A stretch of 64,000 bases of DNA from Convolutriloba macropyga. Lineage: Eukaryota. The notes beneath the pieces were generated by a model, which saw nothing but the letters and a program-made list of their open reading frames with translations, did not search any database and was not told the origin of the DNA. The stretch lies in contig NC_134468.1 of assembly GCF_964194025.1 (NCBI RefSeq), positions 6,262,001 to 6,326,000 of the forward strand, in the 5' to 3' direction. How positions within the stretch are numbered: the first letter of the stretch is position 1; each line of letters opens with the position of its first letter. The translations under genes and the position numbers were made by a program. Positions 22,321 through 52,252 of the stretch are shown one piece after another.

Positions 22321-22478
22321 AAAGTTTTATATTTTCAAGTCTCATTAACTGTAGGTTAAGTGAGTCTGACGAAAACACTGAAAAATCTGGCACTAATAGA
22401 GAAGCCTTTAAAGATCAGAATTTTACTTCCATCTTCTCTGAAGTGGTTTCGTGATTTCTGATGTATTTCCGGAATTTT

Positions 22479-22562: not shown

Positions 22563-22838
22563 ATTGATCACTATGTTTGTAATTAATTTCCAGACATCAA
22601 TTAAGCAGATCAAGAACAAAATGATTAATGCAATTGTAAAAAAGCTCTGCTGCAGCGTACACCTTAGGCCAATGTAAAGGACAATAATGTTTTTTCTAAA
22701 ATCAAGTTTGAACAAACATCCCGTCTTTAAAAGATTATAGAATAGAGGGCTTTCACTTTAATCTGAAAAACCAGTTTCCTAAAAATCTATGCGGCTATGA
22801 AGAGCAGGCACTGTCTAAACAATATTGTTTGTTAACAG

Positions 22839-34019: not shown

Positions 34020-34230
34020 ATGGAAAGTGAAAATGACCCGGAAGATGTCCAGAATCGGCCCAGGCCCCTGCCCCCAATCAGCCAGAACTCCCTTTACTCA
34101 AACAAGCCCTACCCTCCCACACCCAGCACTATTCTGCCCAAACAGGTAGACCCGGATGCATTGCGACAAATCAACAAAGAACATTCAACCCGAATCAAGT
34201 CGGACCAAGACGATTCAGATGGCAATAAAG
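34020..34230 (+). CDS. DEG/ENaC gene B exon 1: Pro-rich cytoplasmic N-terminus
   Basis: ATG at 34020, MESENDPEDVQNRPRPLPPI...DGNK. AG|GTACGA donor is phase 1 and fits exon 2. GC-richer than the flanks. Confidence 0.7.
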
Positions 34231-35027
34231 GTACGATTTCATTCAGTTCTCATAATCCTAACAACAGGGAAAAACAAAAGGCAAAGACTCAATTGCGTGG
34301 GTACCATGGTGATTTGTGGGTACATGCCTGATCGTAATAAAACTTTCTGAGAATCAACTAAACTTAGAACTGATCTCAAACATCAGTTCCCCAACCAAGA
34401 TTTTTGTCAAAATCAGGTTTTACATTAAAAAAATAAACAAAAAGATAAGTGATATTTTGGATATGCCATGGAAATCGTAATAACTTATTTTCTGCCAACA
34501 AATCTTCCAAAAAATTGCACAATTTGCTCCCAAAATAAAAGTTAAATAGTTAAGCAGAGGGTTTACAACATCGTCAGCAGGCTTAAAGTTAAAAAAACAC
34601 AGCAACTGATGGCATTTAGAATTTATCCTACCAAGTTGCTGAGCAGCAAAAATGAGGAATTGAAGCGTTTTTTGCACGAAGATGGTCATTTAGTAAGCAC
34701 AACTAAGTTCAGATGTTTCAACTTTCTGAATGCACAAGAATCTTATATTTATATAAAACATTTTGATACATTTTTGCACAAATTTATCAAGTAAAATTGA
34801 ATGCAAGTAGAAAAATATTCAGTCCAATTTATCCACAAAAATTTTAAATATCATTAGCAAAAAAATTAAATAACGTTCTGGGATTATATACAAAGTGAAT
34901 CTGATTTTGAAATTTTTGAAGGTCTATCCCAACAGCCTCGACACTTAAAACAACATCTGGTGAAAACATTAGCTCACCATAAATTTTTTCTTTAGAAAAT
35001 TTGTTCCAGATTTTATGCATTTCGCAC

Positions 35028-35681
35028 GGGGGGGGGGGTATATTAGGCGAAAATTCAATTAGTAGGAGAAAGGTATTTTGGCAGCCAATAGGCAAAAATC
35101 CTGAACTAAAGTTTTGTGGAAACTAGGCGAACAGCAATTAAAACACTTGAAAGAGGTACTTCAAAATCCACTTGATGTTATAAAGTTGTCAAGTGTCCCT
35201 AGCAGTCAACTTTACAGACCAAAGAGTTGTTGAAATTATATGCAAAATGTATAATTGTTTTTAATGTTTTGCATCTCTTTTACTGTACTACTCAATGTCA
35301 TCGCGGCCAATGATCGTGTTTTTAAAAAAGTAAAAAAAAGGGAAGAAATGTTTAAAAAACCTATAAATAGCTTTAATATAAACAATTTAGAAATACTGGT
35401 TGAAAAACGCACGAAAAATGCTCTAAACTACATCTTGAAAACAATCAAAATTCGAAAACTAAATCCATTATTGATTACTTTCAATACTATTTTTCCGCTA
35501 AGTCTATAGTCACTTAATTACATTATATTAGCTAACGGATATTGCAGCACCTGCTTTAAACGTATCAATTGGTATTCGCCTAATTTCCATTAAACTATAT
35601 TTCAAAATTTTCGCCTAATGGCTACAAAAAGCCTTTCGCCTAATCGAGTTTTCGCCTAATATCATTTACACCCTACACCCT
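35028..35681. mobile_element. Mutator-like MITE with 9-bp target-site duplication
   Basis: ATTTCGCAC at 35019-35027 and 35682-35690; G-rich and C-rich ends; subterminal TTAGGCGAA / TTCGCCTAA repeats in inverted orientation. Confidence 0.8.
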
Positions 35682-36492
35682 ATTTCGCACAGCTTGTCAA
35701 TATTTTGTTTCAAATTGCAGACTATTTTTCAGTTCATGTTAGTTTCAGTTGTTGCAACTTGTGATGAAAGCCCTTTGTTAAGGAATATTTGATAAAGGGT
35801 TGCTCTTTATTTCTGTCTACAATTTTTCATTATTACTGAAACTGTTCAATTAGGAAAAATATACGCTTAACTAAACTTTTTTATCTAAACACTTTTGGAA
35901 ATTAAAAATGCGCTCTAAAACTTTTTGTTGGAAAATACAGTCTTTTCAAACGATCTATTCCAAACAACACTTTGGTCTCTATTTGTGTTTTAATCAACTT
36001 GTATTTAATAAACAATGGAATTTTCGTCAATCAACGTCAAACCAAATATACAGAAATGCGAATCATTTTTCCTCATTTGGGAGTTATCATATTTTTTTGA
36101 AATTTTGCTTGTTATAGGCTCATGCAATTTGGTTTACTTAATTGACAAGAAAACTAAATCAGCCAATTTCTACCTTATAAGGAATGAACAGATATTTAAA
36201 GTAGAGTACTGAAGAAAGAAAGATTTCTGAGGTCTAACACTTTCAAAGAGTAAAAAACAACCATTTTCATGTTTTCCAGTTATTCCAAGGTTTTGGAAGG
36301 TTGACTCATTTTTTAGACTATGACCCTGATTCTGATTTTTAGCCACAGGTTCCTGAAAGAAATTGAAAGGAAACAAATAAAACTTTTTGAAAGAATTTAG
36401 TCAAGGAGTCACTAAGTCTAAGATTTTTCACTTAATATTTCGCCGTCTTCAAAACCTAATGCCTGCTCAACACAAAAAATAGAGTTTTACAC

Positions 36493-36752
36493 CAGCTGAT
36501 GATCAGGACTTCCAGTAAACAATTCGCAAACATTTTTAGTGTAAAAAAATCAACATCTATTACAATTTTTTAGTCTTTTTTTACCCAAATTGTCCCAGTT
36601 GATACATTTAATGCTTCGATAACATTTTTCGTGACTGATTTTGCAGACACGACTGATTGAAATAAAAAGTAATTTCAGTCATAGAAATGAAAACGTTTCG
36701 TCTCGTTAAACATTTGTTCCGACAGACTTCGCAAAGTCCTGATCATCAGTTG
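36493..36752. mobile_element. Small MITE-like element with 19-bp terminal inverted repeats
   Basis: CAGCTGATGATCAGGACTT ... AAGTCCTGATCATCAGTTG (18/19 complementary). No clear TSD. Confidence 0.6.
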
Positions 36753-36873
36753 AGCGAAAATTTGCTTCAGAAAACTTTCATAAACGTCATTTCTTGAAAG
36801 TGATTTCCAAAATTTTATTTCTTAAATGCTGATTTCAGAAAATTCTACCGAAACGTACGATAGTAAAAATTTC

Positions 36874-37271
36874 GGTGTCCCGCTTTTTCACTCCTATCCA
36901 TTTAACCCCGATTTATTCACCCCTGTATCATTTAACCCCTCTGTCTTTTAACCCCTCTATCATTTCACCCCGATTTTAATCTTTCTATAAAGTAAGGATT
37001 ATTAAATTATAGCAATATAATCATTTGGACATGCCTCGCAGACCATGGCCATGCCTCAGCGGCCCGTGAGACTTGATATGAAACTATCACAACCGAACGT
37101 GGGATTAATTTATCCACTTAATTATGACAAAACATGCCTTTAATGCCGACTGCTAATTGGTGGAAATGATATAGGGGTTAAATGATAGGGGGTGAAATGA
37201 TAGAGGGGTTAAATGATGTGGTGTTAAAATATGCGGGGTTAAATGAATCGGGGTGAAAAGAAGTAGAACCC
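36874..37271. mobile_element. Foldback/MULE-like element whose TIRs are built from ~17-bp subrepeats (TATCATTTAACCCCTC)
   Basis: Arrays of TTTAACCCC on the left and GGGGTTAAA on the right; flanking direct repeat AAATTTC(G) at 36867 and 37272. Confidence 0.8.
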
Positions 37272-37705
37272 AAATTTCGTATACATGAGAGAAATGTGTG
37301 TGTTTTGAAGTTTCACAGTTACTACTTAATGCTTTAGTCTTAGATCAAATCAACTGTAACACTTCTTTTGATTGAAGCAAAATTCAACTTCCCAAATCAA
37401 TTGTTCCTCGTAATCACTTGGAAATAACACAGTTAGATGTAAAATCAGATAACAGAATGCTAGAAAATTGCAAAAAAAAGTCATTGCATTGAGTAGTAGT
37501 AATCTTATTTGCTCCGGGTAATGTTAACAACAGAATTTAACGTTTTCATACTCGCGGACATTTTTCATTTCAAATTGAAAAGTTCAATTGAAAAGGTTCA
37601 ATTGAAAAGGTCAAAGAAAATGCCAATATATCACTCTTACTCTTAGTACACACTTTGCAACCTTTAGTAACAAAAAATTATGAAATTATGCGTCAAGTGG
37701 TTTAG

Positions 37706-37853
37706 GTGGGGAAATAACGCCTTCAATAAAGGATTCGGCTGTGAGGCTGCAAGGAGCCACGATGCCTCAGACAGCCATGGAGCATCGAGTTCTTCAGATG
37801 ATTTGGATTCTGGCATACCTAGGACTCGCAGGACTCTTTTTATATCAGTTCAG
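37706..37853 (+). CDS. DEG/ENaC gene B exon 2: pre-TM1 and TM1
   Basis: In a frame not shown in the ORF track: GEITPSIKDSAVRLQGATMPQTAMEHRVLQMIWILAYLGLAGLFLYQF. Phases 1/2 fit both neighbours; TAG acceptor, GTTAGT donor. Confidence 0.88.
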
Positions 37854-38069
37854 GTTAGTTAGTTCTGACTATCAAACAACAGAGCAAAACGAGAAGAGTA
37901 GCAATACTTAATTTTAACGTTAAAATGTAACAATATAATTCTGTAACATTGGTGCCAAAATCGACCCTCAATCAATAATAGATAGGTTCTATATATATTT
38001 TTTACATAAGTTGAACAGAGGCGAATGCTACTGTGGAAAGTACAATTTTGGCCAGTATTATGCTGAGGA

Positions 38070-38375
38070 AATTGAATGTCTTCAAGTTCAAAGAACTATT
38101 TCTTCCCTTTCTAGGATTTTGATGTAGTTAATACTAATTTGTTACATTAAATATCGAAAAATTGATTGCTGCTATCGTTTTACTCTCTTACAGTTTGATA
38201 TAGGTAGTCGAATGAACTTAAGTAAAGTTCATTCGACTACCTATATCAAACTATAAGAGAGTAAAACAAGAGCAGCAATCAATTTTTCGAAATTTAATGT
38301 AACAAATTAGTATAAACTACATCAAAATCCTAGAAAGGGTAGAAATAGTTCCTTGAATTTGAAGAAATTTAATTT
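38070..38375. repeat. Long imperfect palindrome (~150-bp arms, 5-nt loop)
   Basis: ...GATATAGGTAGTCGAATGAACTT-aagta-AAGTTCATTCGACTACCTATATC..., with complementarity extending ~150 bp each side. Confidence 0.92.
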
Positions 38376-38548
38376 AAAATATAAGAAAATAAACAAAACC
38401 ACCATTTCAAAAAAGCATTATTCGAAAATTCTATTCTTTTACACTTCTATGGAAAAACAGATGGCTTTGGGGGCTTCCTAAATTGATCTTGACACGCACT
38501 TCAAATGAAACAATTAAAAATTAAAATCCTCATTGTTTTCCGTTTCAG

Positions 38549-38813
38549 CATTTTGGTGAAAAACTATCTGAAATACAACGTTGATATCAGTATCGAAATT
38601 CAAACGGCACAATCACTGAAATTCCCAGCTGTGACAGTTTGTAACGAGAACCCTCTTAGAAGATCTCTGATTGAAAGAATCAACAAATTCAACGACTTAG
38701 TGCTGCTCGATGACTATGTATTGAGTTATGTGTACTCGGTGGCAGAAAACTCAGACAGCAGTTTGGACTTTCCCGACTGTGCTGATGGTTATGATACTTG
38801 TAACAACACTAAG
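38549..38813 (+). CDS. DEG/ENaC gene B exon 3: post-TM1 FPAVTVCN motif and start of LDLa
   Basis: ILVKNYLKYNVDISIEIQTAQSLKFPAVTVCNENPLRRS...DCADGYDTCNNTK; GTATGT donor. Confidence 0.92.
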
Positions 38814-41528
38814 GTATGTTCTCTTGAATATCTGATCTATTCTGTTTTGCCCCCTTCTCTACTACAATATTACTTGGCCTACAGTTTAGATAGCCGGTTT
38901 GAGTTAATTGCAGATCAGTAATCGCGGCCATGCCTTTCATGCCCGGGGGGATGTAATCCGGAAATCGCGTGTCGGTTATCGCGGCTAAGCGCGCCCACAG
39001 ACCCGCCAGTCGGAAATTCTTTTCGCTTTGGATTCCAATTCGGCTAATTGTCATAGCATGACGTATTTTGTTCATTTGAGTTTCATATGGTATGCGCATA
39101 CGTGGAAAGTTAATAGTAGTCTTGGATCGGTTAATAAATTGCTTGCTTGAATTCTAATCAAGAATAGCCCCCCCCCCCCTGCAAAGGGGGATAATAGTTG
39201 AAAAGATCCTTATTTTCTGTAAGTTCAAACGTTCAACCGTTTGATTACCAATCAGTTGCCACTGGGTTATTGTTTTGATCATTTCTCAGGTCACTAGACT
39301 ATGTGTCCATTGGGGTCAGTAAATGAGGCCGAAAAATTAAAAAAAATCACATCCTGATAATTATGCTTTTTTCTGAAAATAGACAATTTGGTAAGAAGAG
39401 CGCTTATCTTGTTGGCTATACATACCCTGACGCGCATTGATACCCACCCCCAATTATACATGTTGTAGCCGGCACTTATTATGCACAATCTGCATTTACA
39501 AAATAATGATGCATCGAACTTTTAAAGTTAAGACATATACGGTAATTTAAATTTGCTTCTAATGTAAGCAAACAAAGAAAAATGCACGTTTTTACTATTT
39601 CTGCGATTATCTTTCATAGTTTTATGGCACAAATTTTTAAGACAACCGGAAACAATTCCGTCCAATCGTCTACAGGTGCCGGCAATATATCATGACTAAA
39701 ATAATGGATCTCTAAGTACCAAAACGTACATTTTGAGGGCCGCAAGCAGACTGGTTAAATCGTTAGAAACGATCCTTGCTATCTTAGAAATGGGAAACTT
39801 GATAGTGATCGGTTAGTATCTCATTTAATCGCAATCTGGGGGATCATCATGCGTATTGTAATTCTTCAGACACAGATACAAACTCTGAACACCGCTTCAA
39901 CAAATGTCTCGGCAATTTTTTTTATATAGAACTGCTAAGGCTTGGAAACGACAAATATATACAAGACTTTTGTGCACCATCAAAAAAGAAATTTTTGGTA
40001 CTTATTGACTCTATTTTTATAACCATAGTCCGTAGAGAATGAACGGAATTCGCTATCAATCAAATGTAAAAAAGATTCAAATCCTATTGTAGAAAAAATT
40101 AAAATAAGTATTACTCAATTGGCACCAACTTTATATGCCAAGAAATAAGAAATATTATATATGCACTAAGTCAAAACTACCCATTATCTTACATATTAAA
40201 TTCTAAGCCAGTCAATCATAAAAAAAAGATAACTCCTATGCATAACCAACTCTCCATGCGGTCTACTTGAAGTCAAGGTAGCAGCAAGAACAATTGACCT
40301 CCTCAACGAGCACCAGAAGTAAAAAAAGTCTCGTAAAAATCAGAATAACGTATCTACTACTTCTACGATCAGATAGAGTCTTTGTTAAAATGTATATGTA
40401 AATTGCGCATAAACAGAAAAAGCGTGTATGAAATGCAAACAAAAGCGATTCAAAAGCAATTTATTTTAAATTAATCTAGTACTTAGCAGCTTTGACTAAA
40501 TTCAAAGAAAAAAAAATAAAAACAATGTTGATTTGCGTATAAATCTTTCTAACTACCCTAGAAGCAAAAATTGTCGATTATTCTGATGAACAAGGAAAAA
40601 ATAAAAAATCACAATAAATACTTATATTACATGTTAAAAATTATAAAAACACCCAAAAAGTAAAATCAACGTCACAGCCTACTCTAATAAGACGCGTTCT
40701 GCGAAAAAAGTGACAAAACCCAGACATTTGATGAATTGAGCTCAAAAAACAAGTGACGGCTGGTTCTTTGCTGCGTGCTTCGCTGTTGATGGGCTCGCTT
40801 ATAACTTGTACTAATTTTGCTCTCAATATTACTATTAGCAGTGAACTGCCGCGTATTTCCTTCAGTCAATTAAAATTCCGAAAGATCAATTTCAATCAAG
40901 CAAAACGTAAAGATTCAGGCGCCAAAGAGTTGAAGTGGTCAGAGGAAAAACACCAGCCGAACTGGAAAAATTGAGATACCAGCCAGTCTTGAGAGCAACT
41001 AATTGCAAGATCAATTAAAAAATAAGCGTTTGCTTTCTATTATCGTAGCTGAGAAAGACAGAACATCAAAGAGAAATTGCAAAAAGACAAACCTATATCA
41101 ATTAAAGCTGCCGGATATTTTTTTCCTCCTAGGAAAAACAAACTTCAATCGGTCACTGCAACCTCTATGTTTGACAAAGTACTCTTGAAATCTAAGAATT
41201 AAATATATATCGTCTGAAAACAATCACATTTTGAAGAACCAACAAGTGAAAGTATCTTAAATGTGACGAGCACCATTTTTCAAATCAACGAGAGGGGAAA
41301 ACCACTTGGACAGCCAAAAAAACGTTAATTAAAAAACTGTCTGCAATTATTAGAGAAATCTGAACTAACCCATGAAAATGATTAGGGGAACTATTTAACT
41401 TTTGCTTAAAATGGTTGCTACGAACTCTGTCATAATAATCAGATGCCCCGCGGCTTGAACACTTTCTGAATTCCAAAAATTAACTAACTTTTGTAGCATG
41501 TATTGGCTAAACCTATCAAATTTTTTAG

Positions 41529-41655
41529 GTTTGTATTCCTGAAGAATGGATCTGTAATGACATTGACAACTGTGGTGATAACAGTGATGAAGAGTTACCC
41601 TACAATTGCGCTGAAATACAGGAGGAAAGGGAAGCTAACAGAACCGAAGAACAAG
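41529..41655 (+). CDS. DEG/ENaC gene B exon 4: LDL-receptor class A repeat
   Basis: VCIPEEWICNDIDNCGDNSDEELPYNC completes a 6-Cys LDLa repeat with the acidic DxSDE Ca2+ motif. Canonical AG/GT; phases fit. Confidence 0.9.
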
Positions 41656-42050
41656 GTTAATATTATTTCCGTACGTCTGCAATCAAAAGTAACCGACCAA
41701 TAACGCAAAATTTTGATCAGGAAAGAGACTGTGCATTTAGCCTGCTTTGACAGTTGAGAGGCCGCTAGTTGACTAATTGTACTTTCAAACCATAACCATT
41801 CATTTTTAATGTTAATTGATTTACATTGAGAAAAAGACAACAAAATTTGTGTTCAATTTTGATTTGAGGAGTAGCAAGGTAAGTCAGTAAATTGATAACT
41901 TTTAAATTTTCAGTTATTTGATAATACTCAATTTTATTATTTGCAAAAACAATTATGTTAAAAAACACCTCACTGGTAATTGCGACTAGAGCCATAGACA
42001 AATCTAGGGGAGAAACAAAAAGATCCGAAATATTCTGTTGTATTTTGCAG

Positions 42051-42199
42051 GAATTTGCAACTGGCCCTACATCCAGTGCCCAGAGGAGGAGTACTGTGCT
42101 GAGAAGTGTGACGGGGATTCAGAGTGTACAGTAGACAAAGGATACGATGAGAGTCTAGAAATCGGATGCCCCGAGAGCTCATGCTCCACAACACTAGTG
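42051..42199 (+). CDS. DEG/ENaC gene B exon 5: second, divergent LDLa-like repeat and CUB start
   Basis: ICNWPYIQCPEEEYCAEKCDGDSECTVDKGYDESLEIGC (6 Cys, CDG and DE motifs), then SCSTTLV. Donor is either GC (42200) or a weak GT (42197). Confidence 0.82.
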
Positions 42200-43459
42200 G
42201 CACGTTTAGTGCATTATCTCTCTTGCTTGGTATCAAAACCAAATTGAACAGAAGAACAATATTAATAAGATTTCTTCACCTAATGAAGAAATAGTTCGTA
42301 GTAATGGTCAATAATAAAAAGAAAATTTGTGAATGATTCCTTCCGTGCGCATAATTTCCCCACCGCATAAAGAGTTATCATCTCACGCTGCTCTGTAAGC
42401 TATTGCAGAAACGTTTGCCTTCATACAAAAATCGTCATCAAAGCATCATACAAATGCCACAATTCAAAGCAAAAAGACGGAAAGGGGAAAACATGAGTTT
42501 TCAGATCAATGTTACAAAATGAAGAACCTTCCGGAGTAATTGCAACTCACTCCGAGAAAGATGAAAACATGCACGAAAATATTTTCAACTCACAGTACAT
42601 ATGCTTAGTCGTTAAAATAACTTTAATTGGTCCATATTCAAGAAAAATGACGAAAGTACTTATTTTTTTAAAATATATAATGGATTAATACAAATCTTTG
42701 TTATCAAACTTTGATTCGGAATCAAAAGTTTTTGCTCATTAAAAGTTCAAATAAGGAAGTGTTTGTTTTGTTGAAGAATTCTTCATTCTTCTCAATCGCT
42801 CTCTATAACATCAGTCTTGTTCTTCTTAAATTTCAGAATTCTTCTCTTTTCAATCTTCATTGAACTCTTGAAAATCCAGATAGAAGTACTTATGGAGAAA
42901 ATTCAGATAGAAGTTGGCCAATTTCCTAAAAGAGCAAGAAATTAAGATCCACGTGAAATCAGTACAACTTGATTATAACTAAATATTTTGTTCAAGTTTT
43001 TGCGAAATTTAAAAGATTTATGATCAAGGTAAACAGATTTCACTAACTGCTTTCAAGGAAAACAGGCAAACTTCTGTCTGGATTTTGTCCGTAAGTACTT
43101 TTGTCATTTTTTAAGAACGTAGACAAATTAAAATTATATTGATTTTCATTCGACTCACGTAAAACTCAAGGAAAACGTAAATCGGAATGTTACTGAAAAA
43201 CTTCTTCTAAAACGGGTACTTTACTAGGTAATTTTTTCATTTGATCGCTTAATTTTGCTAACAAAACTAGTTGGCTAAATTCTTTCAAATTGCACAAAAA
43301 GTACGTTCTTAAGAATATTTAATCCCAAAAAACTCTGATTTGATATGAAAATACACTTGAGTCAAGCCAAGTCATAATTGAGCAAAAGATTCGCAAACTT
43401 ACGAAAAGATCAGCCTGGTAACGAAAGGCAATAAAAACAGTTGATTTGATTTCTTTCAG

Positions 43460-43598
43460 GCAACGACAACTGAACAAGATGTGACCTCTCAAAATTGGCC
43501 AAACCACTATGCATCTAACACAGACTGTGTCTGGATCATAGACGCAACCGGCAACGGTGATCAAGTCAGCTTGACATTCAAAGAACTCAGCACTGAAG
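43460..43598 (+). CDS. DEG/ENaC gene B exon 6: N-terminal half of CUB domain
   Basis: ATTTEQDVTSQNWPNHYASNTDCVWIIDATGNGDQVSLTFKELSTE matches the CUB pattern (SPNYP..Y..N..C.W.I...V.L.F..F.LE). The 3' end is inferred from a GA donor. Confidence 0.85.
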
Positions 43599-43954
43599 GA
43601 ATGCAGCAATTGGCATACATTTAAAAACAAAACTTAAATTAAGGAGGCCACAATTGATAATTTTGTTTAAGCGAAGAATAGAAATTGCTGTCTCACAAAT
43701 TACTACAGTCCTGATCACAATGTTGATCAATGTATAAACAAAAAACAAATAGAACAGCTATTCTTCATTTTTAAGAACTCAAGGGGCAAAAATGGTTAAT
43801 GCGTTCTTAACTAATCATAATTTTTATGGGTTGAAAAGAGGTGGTATTATCAATTGCAAATCAAGGCACAAAAATTAAAAATTACAAACCAAGGCACAAA
43901 GGAACAATCTAATTCGACATTGTTCCTTAATTACTTTTTCAATTGCTTGCCAAG

Positions 43955-44160
43955 GCGAGCCTGGTGACTGCAATGATTACGTTGAACTTTACGATGGAGA
44001 ATTTGTCAACGCAACGGTTATCAAAATTGACGGACGCAAACGAATATGTGGATTTTCGAACCCATCAACTACAAATTACATTTCTACTGGTAGTGTTATG
44101 CTCATTCGGTTCGTATCGGATGAATTGAACAACTTTGAGGGATTCCAATTGGGATATCAG
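43955..44160 (+). CDS. DEG/ENaC gene B exon 7: C-terminal half of CUB domain
   Basis: GEPGDCNDYVELYDG...RICG...STGSVMLIRFVSDELNNFEGFQLGYQ, collinear with gene A exon 10869-11074. Inferred GC donor. Confidence 0.87.
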
Positions 44161-45126
44161 GCTAGGATCGGTTTCCTTTCATTAAATGTTTCACCCAATA
44201 TTCCAATACTCACTCCATTTTAAACCCAATATTCAAAATCTTAACAATATTCTCCGTTCTTGACCTATAAAAAAATGTCTCATAGCACAGCAAAGTATTC
44301 AAAAAATGAATATTTGTTAAGACACGGGAGCGTGAAGGCTGCTACTAACGAGTACCCTCCAAAATGGGGGCACAAATGGTAAGAACCTAACAATCTTCTA
44401 GCAAAATCCACTCGCCCTTTAATTATTTACGTCTTTTTAGCTCTTGAACAACTAATACTTTTAGCCCATAGGAATAAAATACGACGGGAGACTTAGCATT
44501 TCTTTCGCACGCACGTGACATTGTCTCAATAAAGAGTTAAAGTACAGTCTGATTGTAGCTGAAATCATGCAGGCTCACATGTACTGAAAAAATCAGTCGC
44601 GTTAAATTTTGAAACTAAACATTGACATATTTGGAAAGCGTTAAACTCTGCTCAAACAAATTCCTTCACGGCATATACATGCCACTGATCAACAGTCTGG
44701 CTCATTATGCAATGATGATCATCAACGAAACAGAACCCAAAAAATAAAAGAACGATATCTGAAAACAATGCAAACGCCAAACTATTGACAAACTATTGAC
44801 TCGAGAAATAATTGTCGGTCAAATATTTGAACTGATGAAATTGCATATAATCAGTACTGCTCTGAACAAAAACTGTTATCGTATCTGCTTTAACATTCAA
44901 CTCATACAGCTTAAGAAATCAAGATAAACTCTACTTTCCAATAACTTGCATTAAATTGCCGCTAAAAAATTAGAGAGCAGTGAAATTTAATATGGAGCAC
45001 ATTTGATTTCATATACGTCAGCAGCAATTGATGTCCATGTCGTATTCTAATTCGAAAAACGCCGTTCGCGGGCTGCTGGTATAATTCGATTTGCTGCAAA
45101 AAGTAAAAGCAGCAAACCGAAGAAAA

Positions 45127-45254
45127 TGGGGACAAAACGTTGATGAGTTTTCGATTCCCGGGAACTTAGTACGATGGACTCTGATAGATTAGTCTATCAG
45201 AGTCCATCGTACTAAGTTCCCGGGAATCGAAAACTCATCAACGTTTTGTCCCCA
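45127..45254. repeat. Perfect palindrome (62-bp arms, TTAG loop)
   Basis: TGGGGACAAAACG...CTGATAGA-ttag-TCTATCAG...CGTTTTGTCCCCA. Confidence 0.95.
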
Positions 45255-45475
45255 GTTTAGGTCGATAACAATTCTGCCGTTAAAGAAGTATCCATTGAAA
45301 CATAAAAAGTTAATTCAAGCTGCGCCAGCGGGCGCTTAGACGGGTAAACTATGTCAATTTTTCTTTCGCCTCATTAATGACGAATTTAACCGCCTTTTGT
45401 AAATGCATTTTTTAAAATTAGTTGTGCTAAATTGCTTTATGACTTTACGGTACAAAGCAAAGTGACACCAGCTTT

Positions 45476-48400
45476 AGAGAGAGAGAGAGAGAGTCAATTT
45501 ATCCTCGCCCAGTTAATACGACGAAAATTATATAAACACATTTTAAACATCAATCAACCATTATTTGAGACAACGGAATTAATCATCAAACGAAATTATC
45601 AACAATTTAACATCTTTAACATCAATTGCCTGAAAAATAGGCCAGGGAAGGACAAGCAACGAGGAGGTCGTTAGACCTGCTTTCCGGCGCGCCCTACATT
45701 TTTCAAACTGATAAAATTATTAGACAAAAACTCAAAAGACAGCAAAAATGTGAAAACATACTTTTGCCATCAAAAAATTCTTAGGAAAAAAACTTATCAC
45801 AATAAAGCATAGAATCCAACATTAGCATCCTCCTGCTGCCACGAACACTTAGCACTGTACTTATTCTATTGCCCCATTTGACCGTAAAAGTTCATGTTGC
45901 TACTTGTTCTATAGTGTCAGTTTCGGAAAGAATAAATGTCAAAAACTATATTTAGACATGAAAAATTTGAACTTTTGAGTGCAAAAAAGAGCCCGCGGTG
46001 CCTTCCAGGAAGGCACCGGCCAAATTTTGGCGTAGAATTCAGCAAAATATTAAGTGATTTAGTATGAGCTTTGGTTCACCTGTAATCCTTGCAAAAGATT
46101 TTTCGAACAAGCTCATCGTTCGCAAGTATGAAAGAATCTCTTAATAGATGGTAAAAACCGGAAACTTGCCACATGCTTGCCTTAATCTCCCCTTCTGGGA
46201 GAAGACTTTGCATTTTCAGCAGATTAAACAGAAGAGAAGAAGAGAGGTACGGTGACAAATGGAGTTTCTCTCCATTTTGATTTCGAGTTTGGGATTTTAA
46301 GTAACCTTAAGAGATGCACGTCTAGTGGACACACCTGATCTTTCCAATTGAAACATATCGTTCAAATACTTTTCTGTATGAAGCCCGTTTAATGATTCAA
46401 TCTATTGAATCATTAAATGCATTTTAAGTATTTCAATTAAAGTATTTTTTCTGTAGCTGATACACAACTAAAGAACAAAAGGTGCAGCATCCGTAAACCA
46501 GTACGCCGTACTGCATAACTGGATTCATTACGCTTTTATAGTTTTCAAGTAACTGGTACGCGTGGAACAAAGTGCCTTAGCTTCGAGATTACACCGCATT
46601 GCCCGCTCAGTCTTGTAAAAACTAATTTTATGTGCGAACGGTAGGAAAACTTTGAATCAACTGTTATACCAAGATATTTCCATTCATTTTTCATAACAAC
46701 ATAATGATATTCAATTTTAAACTGATGACTGGAAGCACTTGTTTTATTATTCAATTGAAAGGTTTTTGAGATGTTAAGCTTTACTTTATTTGCATTTAGC
46801 CACTTCGTTATCTTTAGAAGGTCGGCTTGAATTTCTTCACTCGAACAGTTCAATCCACATATATTAGTGTCGTCGGCAAAGAGATAAATATCATTTTGAG
46901 AGCAAACATTTGGCAGATCATTAATGTAAATCAAAAATAAGAGTGGCCCAAGGATGGATCCCTGAGGAACGCCACAGTTTACATTTAACCAATTTGATGA
47001 CACACCCATTTTTGTATTTTTTTGTGATCTTTCAGATAAATCGCTTTTAAACCATTTTAAGGCAGTATGACGAATACCATGTAGTTGCATTTTGTAGAGT
47101 AAAATTTGGTGATCAAATGTGTCAAAAGCCTTCTTCAGTTCAAGAAGAAAGTTTACGGTTTCTACTTTAATTCTCCTTATTTTTTCAGTTAATTCTGCCA
47201 ATGCATCAATTGTTGAATGGGTTTTCCGGAATCCCAATTGCTTAGAATATAGTAGATTAAAATTCTCCGTGTACTCACATATTCTGGCGAACATTGCTCC
47301 CTCATATTTTGCTCCAAACCATTAGAAGATATTGGTCTATAACTATTTTCACCCAACCGAGAACCATCTTTGAATAGAGGAATTACCTTAGCTTTTCTGA
47401 GTTCTTTTGAGAAGCAACCTTCATTGAAGGATTGATTTATTAGTGAAGCTAGATAGCAAGTGATCACAGATCCTGCAGTTTTCACAATTATGTTATTAAT
47501 TTCATCTTCACGCGATGATGTTTTCTCCGGAAGAGATTCTATGATTCCTTTTATTTCATATTCGGATACCGAACTCAATCTAAATGACATTTCAATGTCT
47601 CTAGGATAAATTATTGGTTCAGCGGGAATACTTTGCTGTATGTTTTTGCCAACATTAAAAAAAACTCATTCAATTTTTCCGCAACTTCAAAAGCGGATGG
47701 ATTGGAATCAGAACTCAAAAAACAGAATTTCAATTTAGGAATCATAGTATTGATAAGAGTCTTTCCATTGAGCTCATTTAGAAGATTGAATGTTTGTCTT
47801 GAGTCTCCGATACAATTTTTGAACTGCTTCTTATAATACGCTTTTTGCTTGCTTCATGCTCTTTTCGAGTCGTAACCGAATGTCTTTAAATTTCTTTAGC
47901 AAAGTCAAATTTGATTTATATTTTTCCATTTCTTGTGCGTCAAATTACGTTGAGTACGTAGATTTACGAGATTGTTATCATACCATTTTGGTAGAAAACT
48001 TTTTCTAGGATGAATTTGCTTTAAAGGTGCATATCGATCAGTAATCGAAACAAAAACCTTATGAAACTCGTCGAAAGCCCTGCTTCTACAGCAGTAAGTT
48101 GTTTTGAGCGGATTAGTTAATTCGTGATTCAAAACGATATTGTATTCCTCAACCTTATCGCGGTGATGGAGAAAAGAAGTATCTCTTATAAACTTACTAT
48201 TGGTTTCAGTTTTTCCTTGAATATTCCATTTGAACAACACAAGATAGTGATCAGAAAAACTTTGATGCTCAAGAATAATGCAATCAGAGAGCAAGTTTTG
48301 ATAAATTAAATGGTCAATGCACGACACTGAACGATCGGTGACTCGAGTTGGTTCGTTCGGTAGAAGCCGGAAACAATTGGAGTTGATTGTATTTACTTAA

Positions 48401-49800
48401 TTTTATGTGAGTAAATTATCCTTTAAGGTATCAATATTGAAATCCCCACAAATAACTGGAGAAAAATTCGAAATGAAATTGCTCAGCATTTCATCCAAAA
48501 GTTCTACAAACTCCAAATTGTTTGCCCTTGGTTTATTGTAAATTACTACTAAACGAAAAAGATAACCTGTCTCACTTTTAACAGCCAATGACTTCTAGCA
48601 TGTTTTCGTAGGCAGTTTGGAACGCGCATTAATCATTAATTTGTATCATTACACATCCTCCTTTTGAATCACGATTCTTCGATATTATACTTTTATAGCC
48701 CTTTACAGGAAAAGAATGTGGATTATCATTTTCCATCAGCCACGCTTCGGTTAAACAAAGGATGTCTGGCGAAGACTCAAGACTACTTACAAGTGCTTCC
48801 AGATGTTCGAAGTGTTTTTTTAGTGAGCGAATATTTAGGCTTAGAACATAAAGCAAAGAACAACAAGCTATTGCTTTAGGTGAATTCAGTACACGGTGAG
48901 GAGGGGGAAAATATTACTCCGAGAATGATTGAAGCATTTACTGAATTCATGGAAGTCATAATTCAGATTCAGCTCATACAGCTCGATTATCTTGTACACT
49001 CTCTCATTTTCTCTCCAAACATAGAAAATTGTGCCTTCTCGCGTCCAAACGGACTCAATTCTTTGATCCTTTTTGATCTTAGAGAAGAATTCGGCACGTG
49101 CTGGTGATATGTCTTCAAAAACCCTGACGTTCGATGACAAGTTTTCTTGTTCCGCAACATTTCTGTCTTCATGACTCTTCGTGCAAAACGCACAATAATA
49201 GGACGCTCTCCTGTTTTGCCACCAGGAAGTCTATGAGCAGTGGAAATATCTCTCGTAGAGAGTGACACCCATACATGACGCAACATCGATGACCTTCTCT
49301 ATCGTTTCAGAATCTTTCTCTCCCACAAGAATCCCTTCATCGTTCTGTCTGGCACTTTCTTTTACACCAAGTAGTCTGATATTATCCCTTCTATTATAAT
49401 TCTCCACAGTTTCAGCTGGAGCCATTGCTACAAGCCTGCATAGTTCTTCTTGGTGAAAAAGATAGTCTTCAATTTTCTGCATGATTTCTGCCTTTAGGTC
49501 TTCTTTGATTGCCTCGATGGCCTCTTGAAAAGCGTTTGGCAGCTTGAATTTCATTTTTTATTATAGGGATAAGATCGTTTCGCATATGCCCAATGCACGT
49601 TGGGATGCTAATACTGATGCGATCTTGTCTATTTTTGACAGGAAAACATCTAAGCTATCTGTACTAGGGCTGGAATCAGGTTTAGCCCTCTTTGCATCAT
49701 GCTTTGAATTGATAGGTATTTGGCCAAGAAACCGCAAGTTGGGTAGCTCAGTGTCTTCGCTTTCATTTGACATCTCTGAAACTATTTAATAAGTTTATCA
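45476..49800 (-). mobile_element. Decayed full-length LINE (ORF1 + APE-RT; CR1/L2-like) in a gene B intron
   Basis: ORF1 (NYNRRDNIRLLGV; ISTAHRLPG...PIIVRF), APE (SLNIRSL, LCLTEAWL, ICGDFNID, SCIDH) and RT (KKAFDT, GVPQGSILGPLLFLIYINDL, FADDT). The (TC)n tail reads as (GA)n at 45476-45493. Frameshifted; 5' end approximate. Confidence 0.93.
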
Positions 49801-49994
49801 CAACAATTGGGCTAAAATTAGAGGGCTCTTGGCTTGCCCTTTTTTGAGTATATCGTTGACTTAATTTTAAGATATATTAAATCATCATAACCATTAAACT
49901 ATAAGAATTTTGGTATCTAAGTAGGTACTGAAATCAACTTTGTGGAAAATGCACAAATGATTTCAAGTAACTTGATGAGGAAACCGTTCATTAG

Positions 49995-50698
49995 GCTATA
50001 ACGAGCTTCTCTCGGCAAAAACGAGACATCGCTATATCTAAATCTGACCTATCAGAGATACATACAAGCGAAGCTTCGCAGAAAGTGAAACGAGGAACTT
50101 TAAGCAAATTCCACTTTCGGACAAGAAGGACAACAGGTGGAGATTCAAACTCGTTTCCTGACTACGATAGAGATTACGATTCTTATCAGACTTATGAAGA
50201 TTATCAGAGAGAAAATTCTAACTTCAATCAATTTGATCAATTCTTCAACATATCCGATAACGACTATTTCACTTTGTATGAAAAATCGGACCTACCAGAT
50301 TATTCTGATTTCAGATTGGCGGCTATTTTTACCCAAAATGAAATGAAGTATAACGGATACCAGAAAGACGACTTCATTGTTCAGTGTACTTTTGACGGCA
50401 AAAAATGCGGTTCGAGTTGGTTCAAGACTTACCAAGACCCATTTTACGGCAACTGTTTCAGTTTCAACTCAATTCGAGATCGCAACTTGTCACAGCCCAT
50501 TTTCATTCGCTCCAGCGGCAAAACTGGACAGGAATATGGACTTAAATTGACGCTGTTTTTTGACGTTGAGGAGTACATTGGTATTTTGGGACAAAATGCT
50601 GGAGGAAGGGTTCTGGCTTACGACCCGGAAATAGTCGGCAACATCAGAGCCCAAAGCTCTGCAGTGGGAGCTGGTATGAACACATTCATCTCTGTCAG
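49995..50698 (+). CDS. DEG/ENaC gene B exon 8: convertase-site linker and extracellular core
   Basis: AITSFSRQKR...KVKRGTLSKFHFRTRR...FIVQCTFDGKKC...DPFYGNCFSFN...GLKLTL...FISVR; GTAAG donor. Confidence 0.9.
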
Positions 50699-51031
50699 GT
50701 AAGATCCACAATCGTTCATACATTGATCAATTGTTGATAAATCCAGTTCTATCTTTTTTCAAGACTGCCCAACTTTTATCACAAAATTTAAATTCTAATC
50801 TTTTACCACAAAATTATCAACTATATTTATAGATCAAGATCAGGCAAAAAAACGAGAATTAGGTTGAATTTGGGCAAAATGAGCACACAGGTAAATTGTT
50901 TCTTTACCTGTGAGATTTTCTCGTGCAACGAATAATGAGATTTATGCCAAAATTCAAAAGCAAATCTAAAAATGCACCAGTTGACAATTAAAACAGTTAA
51001 GAAAACAATTAACCAGACTTTCCTTACATAG

Positions 51032-51300
51032 GTACACAGAAATTAACCGCAAGGGTGGCAAATACGGAAACTGCACAAATGGCTGGCCCGATTTTCTCAG
51101 TCTCAATTCTGACTTCAAGAAAAAGTGGCCAAAGTACGACAGAGAGACTTGTCTATTCTACTGTCTACAGAATGCTATGGCTTTGGAGTGTGGTTGCACT
51201 GATAGCTACGAGGCTGAATTCAGCACAAATGCCGTGATCAATAGTGCTTCTGAATACTACTGCGACCCAACCAACAGAACTCAAAGCCTTTGCAGAGAGG
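51032..51300 (+). CDS. DEG/ENaC gene B exon 9: thumb domain
   Basis: YTEINRKGGKYGNC...YDRETCLFYCLQNAMALECGC...; 269 nt as in gene A. Confidence 0.92.
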
Positions 51301-51809
51301 GTAAACTTTTTCTTTCTACTTAATGAACGGAAACCGTTATCAGATTCAAATCTTCGACTGAAAAAAGTTAATCAGGTACAGTTGATGAAGAAACAGTAAA
51401 AATTGGAAACTTAAAGACAAACTTGCTCCATTAACAGCAAATTTCACATACTTTCAAAGTGTGAGGCCGTACTTTTGAAACCAAACTTTCAAAAGTTGAG
51501 ACCGCTAATCTCTATTTCATCAAACTATCCAGCCCGCACGAAGATGCCAGTAATGGTTGTTTTTCGAAGAAACTGATTTCAAATGTAAAGACTACCCTCC
51601 CCTTGATCTTTTGCAGGATCTTCAACAATTATCTCAAGCCTCCTCTTATTATCGTAAGACTTTTTTATTCGTTAATGTTTTTTTATTCTTAGTTATAACA
51701 TATAAAAATTCCGAATTACTCTTCAATAAATGGAAGAAAAGATTGCAAACTGCTCCAGGGATATTTCAGGTATGAAATTTCTGCTATCGAATAATTTTTT
51801 TGTTATCAG

Positions 51810-52252
51810 ATATCTACGACAAATTCAAAAATAGCTCACTGGACTGCTCAAAATGTCCTCAAGGATGCAAAACAATAGACTTCAACAGACGGCAATCGGT
51901 ATCTCCCTGGCCTTCCGAATCTTATGCCCCATTTTTTGCCTCCAAAATGCTCAAATCGAAATCAGCTCGAGTTCTCGCTTACATGGCCAATGTCGTCAAA
52001 CAAGATAATCTGAGCGCAATTTCACTCATGCAAAGTTTTCGCCGCAATTTTGCGCGCGTGGAAGTGTTCTACGAAACTTTGAATTTTGAAAAGATGTCAG
52101 AAAGTCCAGCATATGAATTGGTTAATCTCATAAGCGACTTTGGGGGTAATATTGGACTCTGGCTGGGCTGGAGTGTACTAGCTATTTTCGAAATTGTACA
52201 ATTCTTCTACGAAGTGGCGGAAGCCATCATTGTGAATAAATGCAAAAACTAA
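51810..52252 (+). CDS. DEG/ENaC gene B exon 10: TM2 and short C-tail
   Basis: CSKCPQGC...SPWPS...ISDFGGNIGLWLGWSVLAIFE; 443 nt as in gene A; stop TAA. Confidence 0.93.

What the first reader, a model, noticed from the sequence alone, without database searches (positions are those of the whole stretch)
34020..52252. DEG/ENaC channel with an LDLa-LDLa-CUB receptor module inserted in the extracellular finger region
Seen: a continuous 886-aa frame reads TM1 - FPAVTVCN - LDLa (complete DxSDE) - divergent LDLa - CUB - basic linker - Y/D tract - DEG/ENaC core - TM2. The paralog has the same CUB exon and core, with many synonymous and few amino-acid differences, indicating purifying selection. Established: the finger region is the variable gating region of this family (protons in ASIC, proteases in ENaC, peptides in FaNaC/HyNaC); LDLa and CUB are Ca2+-binding protein-interaction modules, and CUB-LDLa proteins (NETO, SOL-2, LEV-10) act as separate auxiliary subunits of other ligand-gated channels. 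Inference: a channel with its own built-in protein-ligand sensor, matrix tether or auxiliary subunit. The characterised members I know lack this architecture, but uncharacterised invertebrate examples may exist.
Basis: partly seen in the sequence, partly recalled or inferred. Interest (0 to 1): 0.85.

Follow-up and report, generated by a model that had tools for sequence, protein, structure and literature searches.

The report
Sodium channel with built-in receptor modules
This acoel worm gene encodes a sodium-channel subunit of the ENaC type whose outer "finger" carries three protein-binding modules and a conserved protease-cutting site, an undescribed channel design that may be switched by cutting or by a bound protein.

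Summary
Confirmed. Window 34020-52252 (+) holds a 10-exon gene. Its 886-aa product is identical to RefSeq "uncharacterized protein LOC142334552 isoform X2" of the acoel Convolutriloba macropyga.

Pfam finds an ASC channel domain (238 bits) interrupted by LDLa (23 bits here, stronger in relatives), an LDLa-like six-cysteine module and CUB (71 bits).

It is not a gene-fusion artefact:
- Exon 3 encodes both FPAVTVCN and the first half of LDLa1.
- Three tandem paralogs share the exon plan (cassette dN 0.23, dS saturated).
- Intronless relatives encode the whole architecture in one ORF.

No RNA data could be found.

The core is closest to vertebrate ENaC subunits. The insert lies between finger helices a1 and a2, where ENaC has its protease-sensitive GRIP domain.

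New here:
- An R-x-K/R-R convertase site directly after CUB is kept in 15 of 18 relatives. All 18 have one somewhere in the linker; this gene has two.
- A disordered acidic Tyr-rich tract follows.
- The HG gating motif is absent.

All named members of the family are acoels. Hemichordates, echinoderms and amphioxus have related channels with other module mosaics. I found no paper describing any of them.

The scan met this family before, in neighbouring gene A (s1-244463) and in a mucin variant (s1-220341). Function is inferred only.

The parts
34020..34230 (+). Exon 1 (aa 1-70): start codon and disordered cytosolic N-terminus
   Evidence: Exact spliced mapping of P0166; pLDDT <50 for residues 1-95
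37706..37853 (+). Exon 2 (aa 71-119): pre-TM1 segment (no HG motif; A-T-x-P-Q instead) and the start of TM1
   Evidence: helix 98-127 in the model
38549..38813 (+). Exon 3 (aa 120-208): end of TM1, beta1-beta2 with FPAVTVCN (38622-38645), finger helix a1, and the first three Cys of LDLa1, all in one exon
   Evidence: Pfam ASC profile 43-123 on this exon; LDLa1 spans 38778-41612; donor AAG|GTATG
41529..41655 (+). Exon 4 (aa 209-250): second half of LDLa1 (W215, DNCGDNSDE)
   Evidence: Pfam Ldl_recept_a 27.2 bits on this piece alone; W215, D228 and E229 invariant in 18/18
42051..42199 (+). Exon 5 (aa 251-300): LDLa-like six-Cys module (C253...C290, YDES); GC donor
   Evidence: Invariant Cys columns; hhalign versus LDLa1 columns 83%; no Pfam hit
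43460..43598 (+). Exon 6 (aa 301-346): N-terminal half of CUB; non-canonical GA donor
   Evidence: Pfam CUB profile 5-53; GA donor also in paralog A
43955..44160 (+). Exon 7 (aa 347-415): C-terminal half of CUB; GC donor
   Evidence: Pfam CUB profile 54-110; Ca-type CUB signature Y317, E346, D354, D402, N405/406
46545..49554 (-). Non-LTR retrotransposon remnants (RT and endonuclease-like ORFs) inside intron 7; not part of the gene product
   Evidence: ORFs with reverse-transcriptase-like text; read by eye only, no family search run
49995..50698 (+). Exon 8 (aa 416-649): disordered linker with RQKR (50013-50024), KVKR (50082-50093), octapeptide GTLSKFHF (50094-50117) and RTRR (50118-50129); acidic Tyr tract (50154-50210); finger helices a2/a3 and beta-ball
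   Evidence: pLDDT <35 for residues 419-492; Pfam ASC profile 84-259; motif conservation
51032..51300 (+). Exon 9 (aa 650-739): palm/thumb part of the ASC domain with conserved Cys
   Evidence: Pfam ASC profile 270-341; invariant Cys
51810..52252 (+). Exon 10 (aa 740-886 plus stop): thumb/palm, TM2 with GLWLGWS (52154-52174), very short C-terminus
   Evidence: Pfam ASC profile 349-455, 94 bits; G859 and S861 in 18/18, W860 in 16/18
10868..23281 (+). Paralog B, exons 7-10 (about 10868-11077, 12237-13211, 19053-19322, 22838-23281). Its exons 1-6 lie upstream of the window. No in-frame stops. RQKR and RIKR sites in the linker and an expanded Y/D repeat
   Evidence: tblastn mapping; translation

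Best explanation
Shown. The locus is an intact gene (RefSeq LOC142334552) for one subunit of a subfamily of ENaC-like DEG/ENaC channels whose named members are all acoels. The loop between finger helices a1 and a2 is the position where vertebrate ENaC carries its protease-sensitive GRIP domain. Here it holds a cassette of LDLa, an LDLa-like module and a CUB domain with the Ca2+-binding signature. A disordered linker follows. It carries a family-conserved proprotein-convertase motif (two such motifs in this gene, RQKR and RTRR, 35 residues apart) and an acidic tyrosine-rich tract. The channel core keeps the 14 extracellular cysteines, FPAVTxCN and a G-W-S pore motif, but lacks the HG motif.

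Inferred.
- The protein assembles as a trimeric cation (probably Na+) channel.
- In the secretory pathway a furin-type convertase cuts after the CUB domain. The subunit then becomes two chains held together by the interleaved extracellular fold, as in ENaC alpha and gamma.
- In this gene the basic 35-residue stretch between the two sites is released.
- The membrane-anchored LDLa/CUB cassette, sitting on the gating-sensitive finger, binds an extracellular protein partner through Ca2+-dependent recognition of basic side chains.
- Cutting and/or partner binding changes finger-thumb packing and hence open probability.
For: Gene and architecture:
- Exact identity to an independent RefSeq model.
- ASC and LDLa sequence share exon 3.
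- The same exon sizes and phases occur in exons 2-7, 9 and 10 of paralog A, with the GA and GC donors conserved. Paralog B shows ten matching exon segments without in-frame stops.
- The whole architecture sits in single ORFs at L011 (866 aa), L012 (821 aa), L001, L013, L019 and L020.
- Omega is about 0.05-0.15 on the cassette.
- The cassette folds confidently: CUB pLDDT 70-82, cassette alone about 80.

ENaC likeness and insert position:
- Best solved relatives are ENaC gamma, alpha and beta (2e-36 to 4e-31), against ASIC at about 1e-24.
- The family profile scores 195-206 bits on ENaC alpha/beta/gamma, against 168 for ASIC1 and 163 for FaNaC.
- Query residues 97-163 align to gamma 49-112, and residues 533-875 to gamma 246-556.
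- The model has helix 168-186, then the cassette, then helices 482-535.
- GRIP is defined as the stretch between a1 and a2 (PMC6197857).

Cleavage:
- R-x-K/R-R lies 9-15 residues after the CUB end in 15/18 relatives, and somewhere in the linker in 18/18. The linker is otherwise unalignable, 59-198 residues long.
- Per-sequence shuffle probability is at most 0.03; 7/18 have two sites.
- Only 10/50 non-acoel long-insert relatives have the motif there.
- The linker is predicted disordered.
- The genome has P-domain convertase genes.

Binding competence:
- CUB: Y317 and D354 in 18/18, E346 and D402 in 14/18.
- LDLa1: W215, D228 and E229 in 18/18.

Pore: G859 and S861 in 18/18, W860 in 16/18.
Against: - No transcript, protein or current data exist. 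Two searches for RNA runs found only DNA runs.
- The HG pre-TM1 motif, important for gating in ENaC and ASIC, is absent from all 18 relatives (17 with readable pre-TM1 sequence). C. elegans EGAS channels, which also carry extra modules, gave no currents in oocytes (PMC10424705). Conduction as a homomer is therefore uncertain.
- Cleavage is inferred from a motif only.
- Three relatives lack the proximal site, and 11/18 have a single site, which in ENaC would not release a tract.
- Published work places the origin of ENaC polybasic tracts within vertebrates (PMC8791634). Any similarity is therefore probably convergent.
- The ENaC-like placement rests on best-hit scores, not on a rooted tree with named references.
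- LDLa1 is below the Pfam cut-off in this copy, and two of its canonical Asp are Asn.
Confidence: 0.5

Rival explanations
1. Mechanical tether. The LDLa/CUB cassette anchors the finger to extracellular matrix, so that tissue deformation pulls on the gating domain. This would be a one-polypeptide version of the MEC-4 channel with its matrix partners.
For: The modules are matrix- and protein-binding types. Related channels in hemichordates, echinoderms and amphioxus carry other adhesive modules at the same place (LDLa x9-11, TSP1, Kringle, PAN, SRCR, F5/8-C, Xlink). The insert sits on the finger.
Against: A conserved convertase site directly after CUB would cut the covalent path from the cassette to helices a2/a3. 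Force would then have to pass through a1 and the TM1 fragment only. No matrix partner is known, and there are no expression data.
Confidence: 0.2
2. Built-in auxiliary subunit. The cassette serves assembly, trafficking or clustering, as the separate CUB/LDLa proteins NETO, SOL-2 and LEV-10 do for other ligand-gated channels. It would not itself gate the channel.
For: The CUB region matches NETO2 and neuropilin CUB domains. The cassette evolves faster than the core but under constraint. It is conserved across an expanded family, with at least 12 loci in this genome.
Against: Nothing distinguishes this from a gating role. The position on the gating-sensitive finger and the conserved cleavage site fit regulation at least as well.
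Confidence: 0.15
3. Non-conducting receptor or adhesion protein that merely uses the DEG/ENaC scaffold.
For: The HG motif is absent from all relatives. There is an unusual Trp in the G-x-S filter position. EGAS relatives were silent in oocytes.
Against: TM2 and the pore motif are among the most conserved columns (G855, L856, G859 and S861 in 18/18). All 14 extracellular Cys are kept. Core dN is the lowest of all regions.
Confidence: 0.08
4. Annotation artefact: a separate LDLa-CUB gene nested in an intron of a channel gene.
For: No RNA evidence could be obtained. Three of nine introns have non-GT donors.
Against: Exon 3 encodes both channel and LDLa sequence. Reading-frame phases fit across all exons. 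The non-GT donors are conserved in paralog A. Six intronless relatives encode everything in one ORF.
Confidence: 0.02

Closest known systems
Vertebrate ENaC alpha/gamma subunits (GRIP domain, furin activation)
   Same: Best sequence match of the core. Both have an extra element between finger helices a1 and a2. Both have polybasic R-x-K/R-R motifs in that element, two of them in this gene. Both share the GLW...S TM2 context.
   Different: The insert is an LDLa/LDLa-like/CUB cassette plus a disordered linker, not a GRIP beta-sheet. There is no HG motif and no PY motif, and the C-terminus is very short. G-W-S replaces G/S-x-S variants. The family's named members are acoels. ENaC polybasic tracts are reported to have arisen within vertebrates (PMC8791634).
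C. elegans EGAS-1 to -4 (EGF plus ASC domain channels)
   Same: DEG/ENaC subunits fused to extracellular protein-interaction modules. They are uncharacterised functionally (PMC10424705). EGAS-1 (Q9U1T9) appears among structural neighbours.
   Different: Different modules (EGF). The ASC part lies at the C-terminal end of EGAS-1 (residues 608-912 of 922), so the modules appear to precede the channel domain rather than sit in the a1-a2 loop. I did not test this further.
Uncharacterised mosaic ENaC-like proteins of hemichordates, echinoderms and amphioxus
   Same: Nearest non-acoel relatives by core sequence. They carry large Cys-rich module arrays ahead of ASC profile position about 100-130.
   Different: Other module sets: LDLa x7-11, TSP1+CUBx2, PAN+Kringle, SRCR, F5/8-C+Kringle, Xlink. 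They form separate clades in the core tree. Most lack the polybasic motif before the core.
NETO1/2, SOL-2, LEV-10 (CUB/LDLa auxiliary subunits)
   Same: The same module types are used next to a ligand-gated channel. The CUB region matches NETO2.
   Different: Those are separate single-pass proteins that serve glutamate or acetylcholine receptors. Here the modules are part of the channel polypeptide.
ASIC and FaNaC/HyNaC
   Same: The same fold (Foldseek E about 1e-22). In those channels the finger is also the ligand-sensitive region.
   Different: Lower sequence similarity than to ENaC. They carry no inserted modules.

Membership tests
DEG/ENaC superfamily | Pfam ASC (PF00858) domain above the curated cut-off | tested here: met
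   238.3 bits against a cut-off of 23.6, in two stretches that flank the insert
DEG/ENaC superfamily | Two TM helices flanking a large extracellular domain with the ASIC/ENaC fold | tested here: met
   Model helices 98-127 and 843-884; Foldseek hits to FaNaC, ASIC and ENaC at E about 1e-22
DEG/ENaC superfamily | Post-TM1 FPAVTxCN motif and 14 conserved extracellular Cys (7 disulfides) | tested here: met
   FPAVTVCN at residues 145-152. C151 (near-invariant) plus 13 invariant core Cys (546, 553, 569, 664, 690, 694, 703, 705, 727, 737, 752, 755, 759). The count of 7 family-wide disulfides is from PMC6197857.
DEG/ENaC superfamily | Pre-TM1 His-Gly (HG) gating motif | tested here: not met
   No HG dipeptide in the 45 residues before TM1 in any of 18 family members (one has almost no sequence there); A-T-x-P-Q is conserved instead
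DEG/ENaC superfamily | G/S-x-S selectivity-filter motif in TM2 | tested here: met
   G859-W860-S861; G and S in 18/18, W in 16/18
DEG/ENaC superfamily | Trimeric assembly and amiloride-sensitive cation current | not testable with these tools
   Needs expression and recording
ENaC proper (SCNN1 subunits) | GRIP beta-sheet domain between finger helices a1 and a2 | tested here: not met
   The a1-a2 loop holds LDLa, an LDLa-like module and CUB plus a disordered linker instead
ENaC proper (SCNN1 subunits) | Polybasic convertase sites in the a1-a2 insert | tested here: met
   RQKR 422-425 and RTRR 457-460, conserved in the family. This is at the sequence level only; cleavage was not tested.
ENaC proper (SCNN1 subunits) | C-terminal PY motif | tested here: not met
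   The C-terminus ends a few residues after TM2 (…AIIVNKCKN). No PPxY seen by eye in the sequence printed.
ENaC proper (SCNN1 subunits) | Phylogenetic placement inside the SCNN1 clade | tested here: inconclusive
   ENaC subunits are the best solved matches. No rooted tree with named references could be built.
LDLa module (PF00057) | Six Cys, an aromatic residue, and the D-x-S-D-E calcium cage | tested here: met
   LDLa1 (197-236) has six Cys, W215 and D225-N-S-D228-E229. Its Pfam score is 23.3 bits, just under 24.1, in this copy, and 25.7-41 in most relatives. Two canonical Asp are Asn (N218, N222).
LDLa module (PF00057) | Second module recognisable as LDLa | tested here: inconclusive
   No Pfam hit. 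Profile-profile comparison to LDLa1 gives 83% probability, with a 3-residue shorter C3-C4 loop.
Ca2+-binding CUB (PF00431) | CUB fold plus the Tyr/Glu/Asp/Asp/Asn calcium-site signature | tested here: met
   Pfam 71 bits. Y317 18/18, E346 14/18, D354 18/18, D402 14/18, N406 11/18. The signature was mapped from my memory of C1s numbering (Y17, E45, D53, D98, N101), not from a tool.

The most novel reading that the evidence does not exclude
Acoels have an ENaC-like channel family that is both protease-processed and protein-ligand (or matrix) gated through a receptor cassette built into the GRIP position of the finger. Control of the finger by proteolytic cutting would then not be a vertebrate ENaC invention. 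It would be either ancient in the ENaC-like lineage or evolved repeatedly at the same structural hot spot. That hot spot also accepted many other module mosaics in hemichordates, echinoderms and amphioxus.
Probability: 0.3. Interest if true: 0.8.

Novelty: new variant of a known kind. Interest (0 to 1): 0.62.

Why it matters
DEG/ENaC channels are studied as proton-, peptide-, protease- and force-gated channels. In every characterised case the finger is the regulatory region, and the ligand or partner is a separate molecule.

A conserved family with protein-binding modules and a convertase site built into that same loop would be a natural experiment in how the finger couples outside events to the pore. 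It gives a direct handle: express the subunit, cut it, delete the cassette, and fish for partners.

It also shows that a large, unnamed part of the superfamily in acoels and invertebrate deuterostomes has been overlooked. Automatic annotation calls these proteins 'uncharacterized'. The phylogenies I could search do not mention their extra domains.

Finally, it bears on when proteolytic control of ENaC-type channels arose.

Tried and rejected
- RNA evidence. Two searches for sequencing runs (genomic 38500-44499, and the exon-rich 49995-52252) returned only DNA-type holders from one study. I therefore did not use read laying. An exact look-up of P0166 in assemblies found nothing. The supplement of the acoel ASIC paper holds no sequence of this family.
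- Complex prediction. I tested the cassette (residues 190-420) against the linker peptide (426-460) with Ca2+. Result: no verdict (score 0.00). This is not evidence either way.
- ESM Atlas. A feature search gave no usable hit.
- Retrogene test. The 3' flanks of the intronless paralogs L011, L012 and L001 show no poly(A) tail, and neither does L019. I cannot call them natural cDNAs.
- Xenambulacraria idea. I considered that the module-bearing clade marks a link between acoels and ambulacrarians, and dropped it. Amphioxus has related mosaics. AFDB clusters show other module-bearing DEG/ENaC proteins (CUB, EGF, EGAS-1) whose organisms the tool hides. The acoel clade is also not nested in the ambulacrarian LDLa clade.
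- Word-indexed protein searches with whole-length queries found few relatives. Restricting the search to the core region worked better.
- Literature. Ten full-text searches found no description of ASC with LDLa, CUB or Kringle. Absence from this library is not proof of absence.

Full report
WHAT IS THERE

The window is AT-rich animal DNA (GC 0.31-0.38). Pfam on the separate pieces gives:
- ASC profile positions 43-123 on the exon with FPAVTVCN
- Ldl_recept_a on the next exon
- CUB positions 5-53 and 54-110 on two further exons
- ASC positions 84-455 on the last three exons

A search of 1.84 billion representative proteins with the core exon led to full-length relatives. From these I reached protein P0166, 886 aa, RefSeq [quoted passage not shown]. 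P0166 maps to the window at 100% identity.

An exact spliced mapping gives ten coding exons: 34020-34230, 37706-37853, 38549-38813, 41529-41655, 42051-42199, 43460-43598, 43955-44160, 49995-50698, 51032-51300 and 51810-52252. The organism is the acoel C. macropyga.

Pfam on the whole protein gives ASC 238 bits, CUB 71 bits and LDLa 23.3 bits. The LDLa score is just under the 24.1-bit cut-off.

ONE GENE, NOT TWO

No RNA run holding this locus could be found, so the case rests on DNA. Five lines of evidence agree.

1. Exon 3 is one open frame. It encodes the end of TM1, FPAVTVCN, finger helix a1 and the first three cysteines of LDLa1. The module is completed by exon 4 after a canonical GT-AG intron.
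2. There are three tandem paralogs: gene A (P0154, upstream of the window), gene B (exons 7-10 in the window at about 10868-23281, exons 1-6 upstream) and the focal gene C. Exact mapping of gene A gives identical sizes and phases for exons 2-7, 9 and 10. Gene B shows ten matching exon segments by tblastn, with no in-frame stops.
3. The unusual donors of intron 6 (GA) and intron 7 (GC) are the same in genes A and C, although synonymous sites between them are saturated.
4. Nei-Gojobori estimates between C and A or B are as follows:

| Region | dN |
|---|---|
| Cassette | 0.23-0.24 |
| Core | 0.12-0.16 |
| Linker | 0.49-0.56 |

dS is above 1.3 or not computable. The cassette is therefore under purifying selection, looser than on the core.

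5. The same genome has intronless paralogs in which ASC, LDLa, CUB and ASC lie in one uninterrupted ORF (L011 866 aa, L012 821 aa; L001 748 aa lacks the first part). Other assemblies hold single-ORF versions too (L013, L019, L020).

At least 12 loci in this genome match both the cassette and the core.

THE FAMILY

Eighteen full-length relatives (30-71% identical) align over the whole length. The following are invariant:
- the six Cys of LDLa1, with W215, D228 and E229
- six Cys and E263 of the second module, with D283 in 17/18
- CUB residues Y317 and D354
- thirteen core cysteines, plus C151 near-invariant (fourteen in all)
- the TM2 residues G855, L856, G859 and S861

The second module gets no Pfam hit. 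It aligns to the LDLa1 columns by profile-profile comparison (83%, E 9e-6) with a shorter C3-C4 loop. "LDLa-like" is the fair term.

The CUB keeps the residues that I recall as the calcium-site signature of Ca2+-binding CUB domains (C1s Y17/E45/D53/D98/N101, from memory). Counts are Y317 18/18, E346 14/18, D354 18/18, D402 14/18 and N406 11/18.

All named members are from two acoels, C. macropyga and Symsagittifera roscoffensis. The rest are unnamed ENA or JGI assemblies.

In a FastTree of 111 core regions the cassette family is one clade of 28 rows (local support 99). An S. roscoffensis protein with two LDLa and no CUB is its sister.

POSITION OF THE INSERT AND NEAREST KNOWN CHANNELS

Against all solved structures, the best sequence matches of P0166 are as follows:

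| Solved channel | E-value |
|---|---|
| Human ENaC gamma, alpha, beta, delta | 2e-36 to 9e-30 |
| ASIC2 | 8e-24 |
| ASIC1 (best entry) | about 3e-21 |
| FaNaC | about 1e-20 |

The family profile gives the same order: ENaC beta/gamma/alpha 195-206 bits, ASIC1 168, FaNaC 163.

Residues 97-163 align to ENaC gamma 49-112 (TM1 to FPAVTICN). Residues 533-875 align to gamma 246-556. Residues 164-532 therefore stand where gamma has its finger and GRIP segment.

The AlphaFold model was built on the 18-sequence alignment and has mean pLDDT 63. Confidence by region:

| Region | pLDDT |
|---|---|
| Core | 75-90 |
| CUB | 70-82 |
| LDLa1 | 50-62 |
| Second module | below 50 |
| Linker 419-492 | below 35 |

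The model shows helix 168-186, then the cassette, then helices 482-535. Noreng et al. 2018 define GRIP as the stretch between a1 and a2 and call it unique to ENaC (PMC6197857). The cassette thus occupies the topological GRIP site. Foldseek confirms the common fold (FaNaC, ASIC, ENaC, E about 1e-22).

THE LINKER

Directly after CUB, a motif R-x-K/R-R is present 9-15 residues downstream in 15 of 18 relatives. All 18 have at least one such motif in the linker, and 7 have two. The linker is otherwise unalignable, varies from 59 to 198 residues and is predicted disordered. Shuffling each linker gives the motif in the proximal 16 residues with probability at most 0.03.

The sequences are related, so these are not 18 independent events. 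Even so, a motif kept in place while everything around it changes points to selection.

As a control, only 10 of 50 non-acoel relatives with long inserts have the motif in the 140 residues before the core.

The focal gene has RQKR (422-425) and RTRR (457-460), with KVKR (445-448) between them. Paralog B has RQKR and RIKR. The genome encodes P-domain proprotein convertases.

After the basic part comes an acidic Tyr-rich tract (residues 469-487; family consensus DY...DYDY). Its composition suggests tyrosine sulfation. That is inference only.

DEPARTURES FROM THE CANON

- None of the 18 relatives has the HG dipeptide before TM1 (one has almost no sequence there). A conserved A-T-x-P-Q stands in that region.
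- The pore motif is G-W-S.
- The C-terminus ends a few residues after TM2, and I saw no PY motif.
- In LDLa1 two canonical Asp are Asn.

HOW IT MOST LIKELY WORKS

Shown: an intact, constrained ENaC-like subunit with a folded LDLa/LDLa-like/CUB cassette and a convertase motif in the a1-a2 finger loop.

Inferred:
- The subunit forms trimeric cation channels.
- A furin-type convertase cuts after CUB. This leaves an N-terminal chain (N-terminus, TM1, beta1-2, a1, cassette) and a C-terminal chain (Tyr/Asp tract, a2-a3, beta-ball, palm, thumb, TM2) held together non-covalently, as in cleaved ENaC alpha and gamma.
- In this gene a basic 35-residue piece is released.
- The cassette binds a protein partner through Ca2+-dependent recognition of basic residues, the usual mode of LDLa and Ca2+-binding CUB modules (established knowledge).
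- Because the finger packs against the thumb and controls gating in ASIC, ENaC and FaNaC, either event should change open probability.

I put about 0.95 on the architecture, about 0.6 on cleavage and about 0.4 on ligand-dependent gating. The combined mechanism is at 0.5.

Rivals are a matrix tether for mechanosensation (0.2), a built-in auxiliary module for assembly or clustering (0.15), a non-conducting receptor (0.08) and an annotation artefact (0.02).

COMPARISON AND NOVELTY

C. elegans EGAS proteins (EGF plus ASC) are a named precedent for module-bearing DEG/ENaC subunits. They gave no currents in oocytes (PMC10424705).

The nearest non-acoel relatives of the focal core are uncharacterised proteins:

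| Organism | Modules ahead of the core |
|---|---|
| Saccoglossus, Ptychodera | LDLa x9-11; LDLa+TSP1+CUBx2; LDLa+PAN+Kringle; LDLa+F5/8-C+PAN |
| Patiria | LDLa x7 + SRCR |
| Branchiostoma | F5/8-C + Kringle; Xlink |

AlphaFold DB clusters show further module-bearing members.

Three DEG/ENaC reviews and phylogenies that I could search do not mention such domains. Ten full-text searches found no description.

ENaC polybasic tracts are reported to have appeared within vertebrates (PMC8791634). The acoel motif is therefore most simply convergent use of the same loop.

I rate this a new variant of a known kind. The scan had already met the family in neighbouring gene A (s1-244463, followed up, with the same reading) and in a mucin-bearing variant elsewhere in this genome (s1-220341).

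LIMITS

- There are no transcript, protein or functional data.
- The ENaC-like placement rests on best hits.
- The tree is a quick unrooted FastTree.
- The calcium-site mapping relies on recalled numbering.
- The complex prediction gave no verdict.

Noticed in passing
window 43599-43954 (intron 6), 44161-49994 (intron 7), 42200-43459 (intron 5): Three of the nine introns have non-GT donors: GA (GAATGC) for intron 6 and GC for introns 5 and 7. In paralog A the homologous introns 6 and 7 also start GA and GC, although synonymous sites are saturated. These donors are therefore real features, not errors.
   Followed up: partly
window 50094-50117: The octapeptide GTLSKFHF lies exactly between KVKR and RTRR. 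Paralog B has GSLKGFYF between RIKR and KR, and paralog A has GKLKGFYS. It is conserved only within the tandem trio, not in the deeper family. This layout recalls ENaC's excised inhibitory tract or a propeptide.
   Followed up: partly
window about 12500-12700 (paralog B exon 8): The acidic Tyr tract of paralog B is expanded by about seven tandem copies of a six-residue unit (YQPNYD). This region therefore evolves by repeat expansion.
   Followed up: no
proteins P0034, P0082, P0057, P0078, P0039, P0055 (echinoderm and hemichordate 'ENaC alpha/gamma-like'): A clade of ambulacrarian ENaC-like proteins has long, cysteine-free finger inserts. These often carry one or two R-x-K/R-R motifs 11-49 residues apart just before the core, like ENaC's paired polybasic tracts. 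Published work dates those tracts to vertebrates.
   Followed up: partly
window 4451-9292 (+) and 46545-49554 (-): Non-LTR retrotransposon remnants lie inside introns of the channel genes. Two near-identical partial copies in tandem sit in intron 6 of paralog B (4451-5942 and 6912-9292). One copy on the opposite strand sits in intron 7 of the focal gene. I read these by eye only.
   Followed up: no
window 55578-56246 (-): A 222-aa ORF has a Cys/His-rich C-terminal part, apparently an exon of an unrelated downstream gene. I did not check this.
   Followed up: no
window 30701-30970 and 31669-31938: Two almost identical 89-aa ORFs lie 968 bases apart, which indicates a local tandem duplication between the two channel genes. 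An assembly gap follows at 32917-33050.
   Followed up: no
G000 C10:41.58-49.28 Mb (outside the window): More than ten further matches to the channel core cluster on one contig, so the DEG/ENaC family is strongly expanded in this genome.
   Followed up: no
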